From Dicyema japonicum (lineage: Eukaryota; Animalia; Dicyemida), in the NCBI GenBank assembly GCA_011109175.1, contig RDEW01000096.1, forward strand, positions 1 to 64,000: 64,000 bases of DNA. Direction: 5' to 3'. How positions within the stretch are numbered: the stretch's first letter is position 1; each line of letters starts with the position of its first letter. The notes beneath the pieces are model-generated. The model searched no databases, was not told the origin of the DNA, and was given only the letters and a program-made list of their open reading frames with translations. A program made the position numbers and the translations under genes. Of this stretch, positions 8,331 through 12,269 are shown one piece after another.

Positions 8331-8777
8331 ATTGCCAATCCTCGATAGGGATTATTTGGCCATATATTACGGATGAATCATGCGGTTCCTAATTGCGATA
8401 TTTTGGAATCATACTTCACCATCTCGTCTTTCACTTTTCGTTTTTGAAAATGAAATCATTCTTTCTCACACAAGAGTACAGGAGGGCGATTCATTTAGTC
8501 TCTTTTATATTCTGCAAGATATTTCTACTTTCCTCAATTTATGGTACCTGCATGATTGAATCCTTAGAAGAAGCCCTGAGACTGCCTGTTAAAAGTAATC
8601 ACGAATTTTTGAGAATTGGATTTGAGGTTACCTCAAAGAGGTATGAAGTAGTTGTAGAATGATTGGAGAATATTTTGCCTTCTGGAAAACAAACAGATGA
8701 TATTGTTTAAGTACACGAATTACCGAATCTACTCTCTTGATTTCATTTAATGCATAATATAGAAAAATCGAATAGGG

Positions 8778-8870
8778 CAGGGGTCAACACCGTGGCTCTT
8801 TGAGTTTTTTATGTGGCTCTTTCATTTATCGCAAATGATTACTTACATCTCCAATAGAAACCTTTTCAAA
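8778..8870 (+). mobile_element. hAT-Buster-like left end / MITE remnant
   Basis: caggggtcaacaccgtggctctttgag start, preceded by the 8-mer gaataggg with the central TA typical of Buster target sites. Confidence 0.55.
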
Positions 8871-8916
8871 ATAGTGTTATTTTTCCGAAATTTTTTGAGT
8901 ATATTTTAACTATATT

Positions 8917-11900
8917 TTTTTTATTTATTTTTTTTTTTAAAACTCAAGAAATTTATTTATAACAATAAAATCGTTCTAAACTAAACTAACTTTATAACAA
9001 TAAAATCGTGGTGTGTGGTGGTGTGGTGTAATTGAGAAAAGAAGAAGTAACCAGAAGCGATATGCACAAGATCGACAAAAGAGAAGAGCTTTGTGAATTT
9101 TGCAATAAAATTAACAAAAGAAAGCGGCTGATATGTTGTGTCGTTTGTTCGTCGTTTTTTCACATGTCATGTGTTGGAATGACCAAAAAAGCCCTTACCA
9201 CCATTACCAACTGGTGTTGCCAGGCATGCCTCCTTCCTGGGACGAAAGCACCATCGACTCCACCTAATTCACCTGAACGAATACCAATAGATTACCAGAA
9301 AACCCTTGAATCAATTGCAAACCTGGCATCTACACGAAGGATCATGATCAAAATTCCAAAAGCAGCCCGTGTTCCTGCCGCCGACTGTTTACACGATTGT
9401 ATTGAAAGGGCAATTTCTTCGACTGACCCAGTTGATTGGACACGATTATTCTACTTTGCACCATACACGCTATGTATGCCCTGTCAGAAGAGGAAAGATC
9501 AGGAATCGCTCACGTCTATTGTAAAGGAAAATATTTGCTTGTTTTCTTCTGGAAATTTGTTCAGTGACTCCCGAGAATATACCTTCAAGCCCTCAAACCA
9601 CGAGAACCATGCCTCAGAAACACAAAGATTGAGAAGAGCGATACATCGCAAACTATCTGAAGGTGGAGTCCGGGCCGCCGTGAGGACTCTAGAAGAGCAT
9701 AACCGTCTAATTGAGCCAACTGAACACTCCTACGATGCACTGGTTGAACGACATCCTGGTCCGCCAGTGGACGAGCAGATCCCTACTTGCTCTGGAGAAT
9801 TACCTAGTCTGATTATTTCTGAGGGGGACGTGAAAGATGCGATCCTCTCATTCGCCCCGAGCAGCAGTGGCGGACTCGACGGACTCCGTCCAGGACACCT
9901 AAAAGACTTAATTGATCAGAATACGGGGAACTCTGGTGTTCGGCTATTATCGGCTATAACGAGGTTAATCAACAGAATGCTTTCCGGAAGATTACCAGAA
10001 GCAATCCGTCATATTATGTTTTCCGCCAAGTTAATTGCCTTTGATAAATGTGGAGGAGGAATTCGTCCTATTGCTGTTGGGTTTGTTTTTCGTCGACTGG
10101 CTTCTAAACTTGCTAGCAGAGCAATCCTTCCGATGCTTGTCAAACAACTGCGACCAACCCAAGTAGGGGTCGGTACTCCTGGTGGATGTGAGGCGGCGGT
10201 TCATGCCGTTCGGATGTTTACTGGAAACAGAACGAACATGCCTTGTGTGGTCCTCAAGATTGACATAAAAAACGCCTTCAATACCATACGGCGCGATGTA
10301 ATTTTGGAAGATTGTCTTACCCATTACCCGTCTATATATAATTATGTTCATTGTTCGTATGGAAAACCGTCCAGTCTTGTACATGGGAAATACTTCATTC
10401 CCTCGTCGTGTGGGGTTCAACAAGGAGACCCACTAGGACCGGCATTGTTCTGCCTCGGTGTCGACCGTGTCATGAGATGCCTTACTACTCCGCTGAACGT
10501 GTGGTATTTGGATGATTGCACCCTGGGAGGTCATCCTAACAATGTATATGACTGTCTACAGAGATTACAAACACAATTGGATACGCTTGGTTTAAAGCTA
10601 AACGCAGCCAAATGCGAAATTGTTAATTATGGATTCTCCCGATATGAATGGAATCGGATCCTATTAATGTTTCGGGGGATTATTCCTAAAATATCGGAAA
10701 TCGAGCCGGATCATTTGGAAATACTTGGATGCCCTCTGGCTGAAACTGGAATTAACGACACTCTGTTGGCTAAAGAACAGCAACTAAGAAAAACTTTTTT
10801 ACGCCTTGGGATGCTGGATGCACATACCTCTCTTTTTCTCATGAAAAACGCTTTATCCACGCAGAAATTAAATTACGTCCTTCGAGGGGCTCCATGTTAC
10901 CTGAAAATGCAACAACTCGGGGCGATTGACTCCCTATTCCGGTCTACGACCGAACGTATTACTAATGTCGAATTCGACGAACAAGGATGGGAACAAGCAA
11001 CCTTGCCCGTTCGCTTTGGTGGACTCGGAATTCTCTCACCATCTGATTTGGCACACCCGGCATATCAATCCTCATTGGACTCCAATCAGAATTTGATCAT
11101 GATGATTCTCCAGCTCCCATCAGAGTCGTCAAAGATCGAAGATTTGGTACACCCTAAAGTCAAACAACTCGGGCAGAGAGACCTTTATGAGTCTGTTTGC
11201 GAGGATAAATACGAGAGGCTTTTGAAAATATCTAACCAACACCGACGAGCCTGTCTTTTAACTGCAAGATGCGAGTGGAGCGGGGCTTGGATCAATGCCC
11301 TACCATTGGAAACGTGGGAACTCACCTAGACGATGAAACGGTCCGCACCGGAGTCTCCATCAGACTTGGATTGAAAGTTTGTCAACCCCATGAGTGCCGA
11401 TGCGGCCGGAAGGTCGACTGCTATGGACATCATGCCCTTTCTTGTCGAAAAAGCGCAGGTCGATTCGCTAGACACAAGGCTATAAATGAAGTGGTGAAGC
11501 GCGCCCTCGAGTTGGCGGGATACCCATCCATTCTAGAGCCAACGGGCTTGAGTAGGGATGATGGGAAGCGACCCGATGGAATTACTGTCTTCCCCTTCTC
11601 TCGGGGCAAATGCTTAATTTGGGATGCTGCCTGTACTGACAGCTTTTCCCAGTCGAAACTTTTGAGGTCGGCAATGAAAGCGGGAGAGGCCGCCCGTTTA
11701 TATGAAAACTCAAAAATAAAGAAATACAGCAGCCTCCTAAACCGTTTCATATACAGCCAGTGGTCGTCGAGACGAGCGGAGTCTTTGGCCCCAAGACGGT
11801 CTCTTTCCTTAGAGCACTTGGGTGTCTATTGACCAAAGCCTCGAGGGAGCGTCGGGAAACCGAGTGGCTTTTCCAAAGGATATCCCTGGCAGTAGTCAGA

Positions 11901-11968
11901 GGTAACAGCCACTCGATCATATCCGCTGGACTTTAGAACGATTTTATTGTTATAAATAAATTTCTGAG
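8917..11968 (+). mobile_element. CRE-clade (RLE-type) non-LTR retrotransposon, near full length, with 12-bp TSD and an inverted 3'-UTR/poly(A) copy at the left end
   Basis: TSD tttaactatatt at 8905-8916 and 11969-11980; inverted repeat 8940-8980 vs 11932-11971; RT and RLE motifs present. Confidence 0.9.
9062..11936 (+). CDS. CRE polyprotein: PHD finger - RT - CCHC - restriction-like endonuclease; two single-base frameshifts (~11305, ~11755)
   Basis: C4HC3 PHD (CEFC..CVVC..HMSC..WCCQAC); GGIRPIAVG, KIDIKNAFN, QQGDPLGPALF, WYLDD; CRCG..GHHALSC, RHKAINEVV, KRPDG, WDAACTD; an alternative frame gives PVVVETSG...WLFQRISLAVVRGN..GL* ending at 11936. Confidence 0.9.
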
Positions 11969-12269
11969 TTTAACTATATTATTAACAAATTATTTTATAT
12001 TAAATTGTTATTTTTATTTAAATTATTGAATATTTTTGCATATTTTAATTTTAAAAAAAAATTACTCGCTTAACCATAAATTCTGTTTGTGGTTCTTCAA
12101 TTATGTTTGTAAATAAGAAAATAAATAGAAAACGGATAGAAAACGTCTCTTTCATCCTCAATGGACTGAGACTTTTGCCATCATATAACCTTTCCAAAAT
12201 GTCTCCATTTCCACGAAACATTTAATCAGAACAAAAATTCAAATCCGGAGAGACACTTTAATTCAAAGC

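What the first reader, a model, noticed from the sequence alone, without database searches (positions are those of the whole stretch)
8905..11980. CRE retrotransposon whose left end is an inverted copy of its own 3' UTR plus poly(A): twin-priming-like insertion, or a TIR-bearing RLE family
Seen: a 12-bp direct repeat tttaactatatt flanks the element (8905-8916, 11969-11980). Inside the left copy is a T-tract (8917-8938), then aactcaagaaatttatttataacaataaaatcgttctaaa (8940-8980). That is the reverse complement of the stop codon plus 3' UTR at 11932-11971, with a single 1-nt indel. A partial second copy follows (tttataacaataaaatcg, 8991-9008). The sense 3' end has no poly(A) and shares tttaa with the TSD. 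Established: twin priming gives inverted L1 insertions, and non-LTR elements normally lack TIRs. Inference: one nick primed on the poly(A) and copied ~40 nt, while the other primed by tttaa microhomology just upstream of the poly(A) and copied the whole RNA. I do not know of this being described for RLE-type elements. The alternative is a family that natively has inverted ends.
Basis: partly seen in the sequence, partly recalled or inferred. Interest (0 to 1): 0.8.

Follow-up and report, generated by a model that had tools for sequence, protein, structure and literature searches.

The report
Twin-primed retrotransposon copy with inverted end
A young R2-like jumping gene was inserted with a short backwards copy of its own tail at its head, most likely because both cut DNA ends started copying the same RNA; it is an insertion accident that recurs in this family, not a built-in inverted repeat.

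Summary
A 12-bp duplication (8905-8916 and 11969-11980) brackets a single inserted block. The block holds a T-tract, a 41-nt reverse complement of the stop codon plus 3'UTR (1 indel), a 10-nt filler, a second 19-nt inverted piece, and then a full-length sense element without poly(A).

Other copies of the repeat that hosts the insertion carry one copy of the 12-mer and no insert, which serves as a paralogous empty site. The element is a PHD-RT-CCHC/RLE LINE; the RLE fold was confirmed against R2 structures. The family is very young, with about 140 copies.

Most copies have no inverted end, so a TIR-bearing family is rejected. Ten of the 40 best-scoring copies carry inversions, and eight of these are unambiguous twin priming. 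Most are flanked by their own 8-10-bp duplication, and four have poly(T) directly against it.

The second priming points run from about 490 nt before the RNA 3' end to the very end. The window copy is the extreme of this series, and two further loci (C246, C345) have the same build. The inverted arms carry 3'-terminal RNA sequence that the sense arms lack, so DNA snap-back is excluded for them.

Not settled: no read spans the left junction, and the "CRE" clade label could not be tested.

The parts
8905..8916 (+). Left copy of the 12-bp target-site duplication (tttaactatatt)
   Evidence: two exact copies in the window against 0.04 expected. Paralogs of the host repeat hold one copy.
8917..8939 (-). 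T-rich tract (T6 A T3 A T11, plus one base). It is the complement of an A-rich tail and directly abuts the left duplication.
   Evidence: It is absent from the paralogous empty site. Poly(T) occupies the same position in L019, L020, L023 and L031.
8940..8980 (-). Inverted arm: reverse complement of the last 2 nt of the ORF, the stop codon and the 35-nt 3'UTR (11932-11971), with one 1-nt indel
   Evidence: I1, 34 nt at 100%; 41 columns, 1 gap.
8981..8990 (.). 10-nt filler ctaaactaac. With the preceding tctaaa it reads as three ctaaa-like units, suggesting reiterated copying or a templated insertion.
   Evidence: The junction string is unique in the genome. The reading as slippage is inference.
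8991..9009 (-). Second, partial inverted 3'UTR copy (reverse complement of 11938-11956). It is fused to the element's 5' end through the shared aaaatcgt/cgt.
   Evidence: (D7). Other full-length copies start with A-run(+/-t)cgtggtgtg.
9010..11971 (+). Full-length sense element. ATG at 9062, PHD about 9092-9229, RT about 10046-10729, CCHC plus RLE about 11380-11930, stop at 11934-11936, 3'UTR 11937-11971, no poly(A). The reading frame is broken near 11300-11330 and near 11745.
   Evidence: Indels at 11302 and 11744/11747 relative to other copies. RLE fold.
11969..11980 (+). Right copy of the 12-bp target-site duplication. Its first 3 nt (ttt) are shared with the element's 3' end.
8770..8904 (.). 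Left part of the older host repeat into which the element inserted
   Evidence: 42 matches at 76-92% identity. It is contiguous with the right part in C268, C338, C257 and C368.
11981..12260 (.). Right part of the same host repeat
   Evidence: colinear alignment with C268:144505-144964.

Best explanation
This is a single retrotransposition event of a non-site-specific, restriction-like-endonuclease (RLE) LINE in which both nicked target strands primed reverse transcription on the element's RNA. This is twin priming in its extreme form, a dual 3'-end priming.

Proposed steps:

1. The 3'-OH of the + strand at 8916 (...atatt) primed on the A-rich tail. It copied the tail and only about 40 nt of the 3'UTR, giving the T-tract plus the inverted arm.
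2. The 3'-OH of the - strand, 12 bp away, primed at the 3'UTR/tail boundary (3-5 nt overlap, ttt/tttaa). It copied the whole 2.96-kb RNA, giving the full-length sense copy without poly(A).
3. The two cDNA 3' ends were then joined head to head. The full-length cDNA ends in ...acg(a)tttt, which is complementary to aaaatcgt in the short cDNA. Annealing there and a short extension explain the second 19-nt inverted piece fused exactly at that microhomology. The 10-nt filler is slippage or a templated end-joining insertion.

What is shown: the structure, the single duplication, the empty site, and the family-wide series of inversions. What is inferred: the order of the two primings, whether one or two RNA molecules were used, and the enzyme that made the junction.
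For: 1. One 12-bp duplication flanks the whole composite and is single in paralogs of the host repeat.

2. The T-tract sits directly against the left duplication, where a target-primed cDNA on a poly(A) tail must start. The sense arm has no poly(A).

3. The family shows a series of TSD-flanked inversions:
- L015: duplication aaacgtgtaa.
- L019: actaacgatt followed by T25.
- L020: cctagatatt followed by T19.
- L023: tataatt followed by T14.
- L026: tttccaaaa next to A11.
- L011: about 10 bp.
- L017: no clear duplication.

4. Counting from window 9010, the second priming points are 2471, 2486, 2505, 2678, 2684, 2801, 2849, 2949, 2949 plus 19 nt of extra tail, and 2962 (the window). This is a continuum ending at the RNA 3' end.

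5. Two more loci have the same build: a short inverted 3' arm followed by a sense arm that also reaches the 3' end. L031 (C246) has the duplication tctgaaatt and T30. L032 (C345) has the duplication aaatattactaat.

6. In the window copy, L031 and L032 the inverted arm carries more 3'-terminal RNA sequence than the sense arm (tail, or further UTR). It was therefore copied from RNA, not from the sense arm's cDNA.

7. In L031 both arms share a private 21-nt 3' extension found nowhere else in the genome. The overlaps between arms show no substitutions, only homopolymer indels. Both facts point to one template source.

8. The junction string is unique in the genome.
Against: - No read or contig spans 8906-8943, so the left junction rests on a draft assembly alone. 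If the inferred genome identity is right, that assembly is short-read based with long-read scaffolding.
- No allelic empty site was seen. The empty site used here is paralogous, at about 80-85% identity.
- The two arms differ by one base (cttgag against ctgag), and the tail is not pure A.
- The filler and the second partial copy need extra steps that are only inferred.
The frequencies are therefore rough and biased towards long copies.
Confidence: 0.75

Rival explanations
1. DNA snap-back. Only one strand primed on RNA. The 3' end of the full-length cDNA then folded back on its own 5' region and copied it, as described for R2-protein-mediated transgene insertions.
For: Snap-back 5' junctions with antisense cargo are documented for R2 proteins in human cells (PMC11371274). 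The 8-nt complementarity aaaatcgt/acgatttt offers an annealing point. Two family copies (L036 and C323:1200208) have inverted internal pieces that snap-back explains as well as twin priming does.
Against: A fold-back copy of the sense arm's cDNA would run into the reverse complement of the right duplication and flank. Instead the inverted arm continues into a 22-nt T-tract that the sense arm lacks. The same holds for L031 and L032. Copies such as L019, L020 and L023 have arms covering different parts of the RNA, which snap-back cannot produce.
Confidence: 0.07
2. Assembly artefact: a chimeric path through repeated k-mers of a high-copy, 99%-identical family, or a palindromic long-read artefact used in gap filling.
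For: The genome statistics match a published short-read plus mate-pair plus PacBio-scaffolded assembly. The copies are riddled with homopolymer indels. No public contig bridges the T-tract.
Against: The filler and junction strings are novel sequence that must come from reads. The composite is bounded by a perfect 12-bp duplication that is single in the empty paralogs. The same architecture, with different duplications and tails, recurs at independent loci. There is no N in or near 8900-9100.
Confidence: 0.07
3. Two independent insertions at one site: a heavily 5'-truncated copy in minus orientation, and a full-length copy in plus orientation next to it.
For: Short 5'-truncated copies are common in the family. 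The filler has a weak resemblance (6 of 9 positions) to the 12-mer.
Against: Two events should leave three copies of the target, or two different duplications. Only two perfect 12-mers exist, and they lie at the outer borders. The short piece has no duplication of its own. The inner junction sits at a microhomology between the two pieces. The same composite recurs at C246 and C345, where both arms share a private tail.
Confidence: 0.04
4. Inherited structure or native inverted termini. The family, or one master copy, carries an inverted 3'UTR at its 5' end, and this copy simply retained it.
For: C201 (L011) also has two inverted 3'UTR fragments in front of its 5' end. Some full-length copies begin with (a)atcgt, which matches the last bases of the inverted UTR.
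Against: About 20 other inspected copies with 5' ends lack it. The window junction is unique. The L011 pieces differ in length and junctions and have no T-tract. A T-tract abutting the duplication is not expected from a transcribed 5' leader.
Confidence: 0.03

Closest known systems
L1 twin priming (Ostertag and Kazazian 2001, Genome Res 11:2059; cited in PMC6895275 and PMC11371274)
   Same: One target-site duplication around the whole insertion. A poly(A)-primed arm and an oppositely oriented arm primed by the other nick. Head-to-head joining with small duplications or deletions at the junction. The frequency is of the order of a fifth to a quarter of insertions; the L1 figure is from my own knowledge.
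   Different: The element here has a restriction-like endonuclease, not an APE endonuclease. The second priming often shows no microhomology. In the window copy the second priming is at the very 3' end, so the poly(A)-primed arm is only about 40 nt and the other arm is full length, which mimics terminal inverted repeats.
Snap-back 5' junctions of R2-protein-mediated insertion (PRINT; PMC11371274)
   Same: RLE-type enzyme. Antisense element sequence next to the upstream target. It occurs after full-length cDNA synthesis. Microhomology and templated extension occur at the junction.
   Different: Snap-back copies the cDNA itself. Here the inverted arm holds tail sequence that is absent from the sense arm, so it needs an RNA template and a second target primer.
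R2 integration model with ordered cleavages and a 4-way junction (PMC6895275)
   Same: Single-ORF RLE LINE inserting by target-primed reverse transcription. That paper remarks that L1 twin priming may be an aberrant relative of second-strand synthesis.
   Different: R2 is site-specific and makes little or no duplication. This family inserts at varied AT-rich sites with 8-12-bp duplications. Its footprints imply that the second nick can engage RNA.
RLE-LINE clades CRE, NeSL, R4, R2, HERO (as summarised in PMC4640811)
   Same: RT followed by a CCHC motif and a PD-(D/E)XK nuclease, in a single ORF.
   Different: CRE, NeSL, R4 and R2 are mostly target-specific; this family is not, which resembles HERO. 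An N-terminal PHD finger is present. The clade could not be assigned without reference sequences.

Membership tests
RLE-type (R2-group) non-LTR retrotransposon | Reverse transcriptase domain of the LINE type | tested here: met
   Pfam RVT_1, E 7e-20. The nearest solved RTs are R2 proteins.
RLE-type (R2-group) non-LTR retrotransposon | CCHC motif plus PD-(D/E)XK restriction-like endonuclease C-terminal to the RT | tested here: met
   In the 40-sequence alignment A1 the invariant residues are CxC..H..C, RH, E, (K)RPD, WD, K..Y and E. The AF2 model has pLDDT 91. The top 7 Foldseek hits are R2 proteins (E 1e-6 to 4e-5), followed by Hjc, cap-snatching and lambda-exonuclease nucleases.
RLE-type (R2-group) non-LTR retrotransposon | No apurinic/apyrimidinic (APE) endonuclease domain | tested here: met
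   Pfam finds only PHD and RVT_1 in the N-terminal 765 aa.
CRE clade | RT groups with CRE1/CRE2/SLACS/CZAR in a phylogeny | not testable with these tools
   No named reference sequences were obtainable. The homologues found are unnamed.
CRE clade | Site-specific insertion (spliced-leader genes in the founding members) | tested here: not met
   The duplications and flanks differ at every locus inspected. The window copy sits in an unrelated dispersed repeat.
Twin-priming insertion | A single target-site duplication flanks both arms | tested here: met
   The 12-bp duplication is at the outer borders only. The same holds for L015, L019, L020, L023, L026, L031 and L032.
Twin-priming insertion | One arm starts with the tail (poly(T) on the reference strand) directly at the duplication | tested here: met
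   The tract at 8917-8938 abuts 8916.
Twin-priming insertion | The arms are in opposite orientation, joined head to head, and each was copied from RNA | tested here: met
   The inverted arm holds tail sequence that the sense arm lacks. A private tail is shared by both arms in L031.
Twin-priming insertion | The pre-insertion site carries one copy of the duplicated sequence | tested here: met
   Paralogous empty sites at C268, C338, C257 and C368. An allelic empty site was not found.
Twin-priming insertion | Both junctions confirmed in reads | tested here: inconclusive
   Only short Logan contigs were available, and these are cut at 8906-8943.
TIR-bearing element family | Inverted termini present in most untruncated copies | tested here: not met
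   Only 2 of about 22 inspected copies with 5' ends have them. Only 3 of about 138 3' ends lie in close inverted pairs.

The most novel reading that the evidence does not exclude
In this RLE LINE the second (top-strand) nick routinely engages the element RNA, so integration is often a symmetric double target-primed reverse transcription. This would mean that in vivo the second-strand cut can come before, or be uncoupled from, completion of the first cDNA, contrary to the strictly ordered R2 model. The TIR-like window copy and the C246 and C345 copies would be its cleanest footprints: both primers at the same RNA's 3' end.
Probability: 0.3. Interest if true: 0.65.

Novelty: new variant of a known kind. 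Interest (0 to 1): 0.5.

Why it matters
Twin priming is textbook for L1, an APE-type LINE. In the literature I could search, I found no report of it for natural copies of RLE-type LINEs. The nearest items are a passing remark (PMC6895275) and the snap-back junctions of engineered R2 systems (PMC11371274).

A young family with ten or more TSD-flanked inversions is a natural data set on how the second nick and second-strand synthesis work in RLE elements. That step is the least understood part of LINE integration. The same step causes unwanted inverted or truncated products in R2-based gene insertion.

For genome annotation, such copies can be mistaken for TIR elements or for two separate insertions.

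Tried and rejected
- **Fetching more copies.** Frequencies therefore rest on 42 loci plus coordinate lists.
- **Read support.** All four runs are held as short contigs that break at the T-tract. No spanning piece and no precise 8916-to-11981 joint was listed. The listed joints (8848 to 11999, 8878 to 11991 and others) have high depth and short sides, and come from paralogs of the host repeat.
- **Sequence search of the C-terminal piece.** Searches against PDB and Pfam gave nothing. A single-sequence fold had pLDDT 37 and was unusable. The question was solved only with an alignment of relatives.
- **Literature.** Searches for twin priming together with RLE/NeSL/R2, and for PHD together with the CRE clade, found no direct precedent.
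- **Clade placement (CRE against HERO and others).** Not possible without reference sequences.
- **Native 5'/3' terminal complementarity as a conserved feature.** Rejected, because most full-length copies have aaaacgt rather than aaaatcgt.
- **The filler as a degenerate third copy of the duplication.** Rejected, because it matches at only 6 of 9 positions while the outer copies are 12 of 12 identical.

Full report
**Observation**

The sequence is as described. The 12-mer tttaactatatt occurs at 8905-8916 and 11969-11980 and nowhere else in the window, against 0.04 expected. Between the two copies lie, in order:

- a T-rich tract (8917-8938);
- the reverse complement of 11932-11971, that is the last two ORF bases, the stop codon and the 35-nt 3'UTR: 34 nt perfect, 41 columns with one gap;
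- a 10-nt filler;
- a second inverted 19-mer (8991-9009);
- a complete sense element (9010-11971) that meets the right 12-mer without any poly(A).

**What the element is**

- The long ORF has a PHD finger and an RVT_1 domain.
- The C-terminal 225 residues have no Pfam or PDB sequence match, and a single-sequence fold failed.
- Forty relatives, 39-59% identical in this domain, conserve CxC..H..C, RH, E, (K)RPD, WD, K..Y and E.
- The alignment-based model (pLDDT 91) matches R2 retrotransposon proteins first (Foldseek E 1e-6 to 4e-5) and then PD-(D/E)XK nucleases.
- It is therefore a single-ORF RLE-type LINE.
- The window copy's frame is broken near 11300-11330 and near 11745. None of the 30 fetched copies has an intact ORF as assembled.
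- The clade label "CRE" could not be tested. The family is not site-specific, which PMC4640811 describes as typical of HERO rather than of CRE, NeSL, R4 or R2.

**The family**

The genome is 67.5 Mb in 377 pieces. These figures equal those published for Dicyema japonicum (PMC6736024); the identity is my inference. It holds:

- about 143 copies with the ORF's 3' end;
- about 28 copies with the 5' end;
- two 3'UTR types: A, about 83 sites, with or without poly(A); and B, 55 sites, without poly(A).

Copies are 97-100% identical. The 3' junctions fall at varied positions of the AT-rich UTR, and the duplications are mostly 8-12 bp, up to about 20, at unrelated AT-rich sites.

**TIR family or accident?**

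- Of about 22 inspected copies with 5' ends, only the window copy and C201 (L011) have inverted 3'UTR sequence at the head.
- The window's junction string is unique in the genome.
- Close inverted pairs of 3'UTRs occur at only three places: the window, C246 and C345.

A native inverted terminus is therefore rejected.

**One insertion or two?**

- The flanks belong to an older dispersed repeat, with 40 or more copies at 76-92% identity.
- In C268, C338, C257 and C368 the left and right flanks are contiguous and overlap by the 12-mer.
- The predicted empty site aligns colinearly with C268.
- Everything from 8917 to 11968 is thus one inserted block, and the short inverted piece has no duplication of its own.

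**Family-wide inversions**

Ten of the 40 best-scoring copies carry an inversion. The table lists the other inverted copies that were inspected. Positions count from window 9010.

| Copy | Target duplication | Tail next to duplication | Second priming point | Overlap of the two arms |
|---|---|---|---|---|
| L015 | aaacgtgtaa | none | 2678 | 113-nt overlap |
| L019 | actaacgatt | T25 | 2471 | 74-nt overlap |
| L020 | cctagatatt | T19 | 2486 | 6-nt gap |
| L023 | tataatt | T14 | 2505 | 54-nt overlap |
| L026 | tttccaaaa | A11 | 2801 | 24-nt overlap |
| L017 | not clear | none | 2684 | 44-nt gap |
| L011 | about 10 bp | none | 2849 | about 80-nt gap |

- In these copies the two arms cover different parts of the RNA in opposite orientation. 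Only twin priming explains that.
- L036 and C323:1200208 have inverted internal pieces in front of a sense copy. Twin priming and snap-back fit them equally well.
- Two short copies repeat the window's build exactly. L031 (C246) has duplication tctgaaatt, T30, a 62-nt inverted arm and a 600-nt sense arm. L032 (C345) has duplication aaatattactaat, a 109-nt arm and a 404-nt arm.
- With priming points at 2949, 2949 plus 19, and 2962, these and the window copy are the end of a continuum.

**Why not snap-back**

R2 proteins make snap-back 5' junctions in human cells (PMC11371274). A fold-back copy of the sense arm's cDNA would continue into the reverse complement of the right duplication. The window's inverted arm instead continues into a tail that the sense arm lacks.

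L031's inverted arm likewise has about 24 more nt of a private tail plus T30, and L032's has about 9 more UTR nt. The inverted arms were therefore copied from RNA, starting at the other nick.

In L031 both arms share a 21-nt private 3' extension that occurs nowhere else in the genome. Overlaps between arms show no substitutions, only homopolymer indels. One RNA, or RNAs from one source, served both primers.

**The inner junction**

Full-length type-A copies begin with an A-run, with or without t, then cgtggtgtg. The end of the full-length cDNA is thus complementary to aaaatcgt in the short cDNA.

The second 19-nt inverted piece ends exactly there. This fits annealing of the two cDNA ends, a short extension, release and end joining. 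The filler (ctaaa-like units) fits slippage or a templated insertion. L011 shows the same reiterated UTR fragment. This part is inference.

**Weak points**

- The public runs are stored as short contigs that break at 8906-8943, so neither the left junction nor an allelic empty site could be checked.
- If the inferred genome identity holds, the assembly is a short-read draft with long-read scaffolding.
- Only 42 loci could be read.

**Verdict**

The TIR-family reading is rejected. I did not test it, but it suggests the host may favour such events.

Noticed in passing
window 8770-8916 and 11981-12260: The element sits inside an older dispersed repeat of unknown type, with 40 or more copies at 76-92% identity. 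Its other copies provided the paralogous empty site.
   Followed up: partly
L003:1470-1510 (C323:1783.1k): At the 5' junction of a plain full-length copy, a sense-oriented A20 run and ttc precede the 5' end. This looks like an end-to-end template jump onto a second polyadenylated RNA.
   Followed up: no
L042:1074-1495 (C13:538.4k); L036:3720-3941 (C370): Head-to-tail tandem duplicates of 3' fragments (197 plus 224 nt, separated by an N), and a duplicated type-B 3' end 165 bp apart.
   Followed up: no
L009, L012, L013, L017, L025 3' ends; A second subfamily (55 sites) has a completely different 3'UTR directly after the stop codon and never a poly(A). L004 shows a third 3'UTR variant. This suggests 3'UTR swapping within one young family.
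   Followed up: partly
P0008, P0011, P0013, P0051, P0053: Some relatives of the RLE domain in other animals are annotated in one protein with ubiquitin hydrolase domains (PF00443, PF13423). This may be a fused accessory domain or a gene-model fusion.
   Followed up: no
P0023, P0054, P0112: Relatives occur in Octopus sinensis, at about 55% amino-acid identity in the RLE domain. From my own knowledge, dicyemids live in cephalopods and this octopus may be the host. That identity is far too distant to suggest recent transfer or contamination.
   Followed up: no
L001-L030: No copy has an intact ORF as assembled, although identity is 97-100%. The differences are mostly homopolymer indels, which may be assembly errors in a collapsed repeat.
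   Followed up: partly
L009 and L025 (C35:665k and 681k): The same insertion with the same flanks occurs twice, 16 kb apart. This is a segmental duplication or an uncollapsed haplotype.
   Followed up: no
whole genome G000: The size (67.5 Mb) and piece count (377) equal the published Dicyema japonicum assembly (PMC6736024). The identity is inferred from these numbers only.
   Followed up: partly
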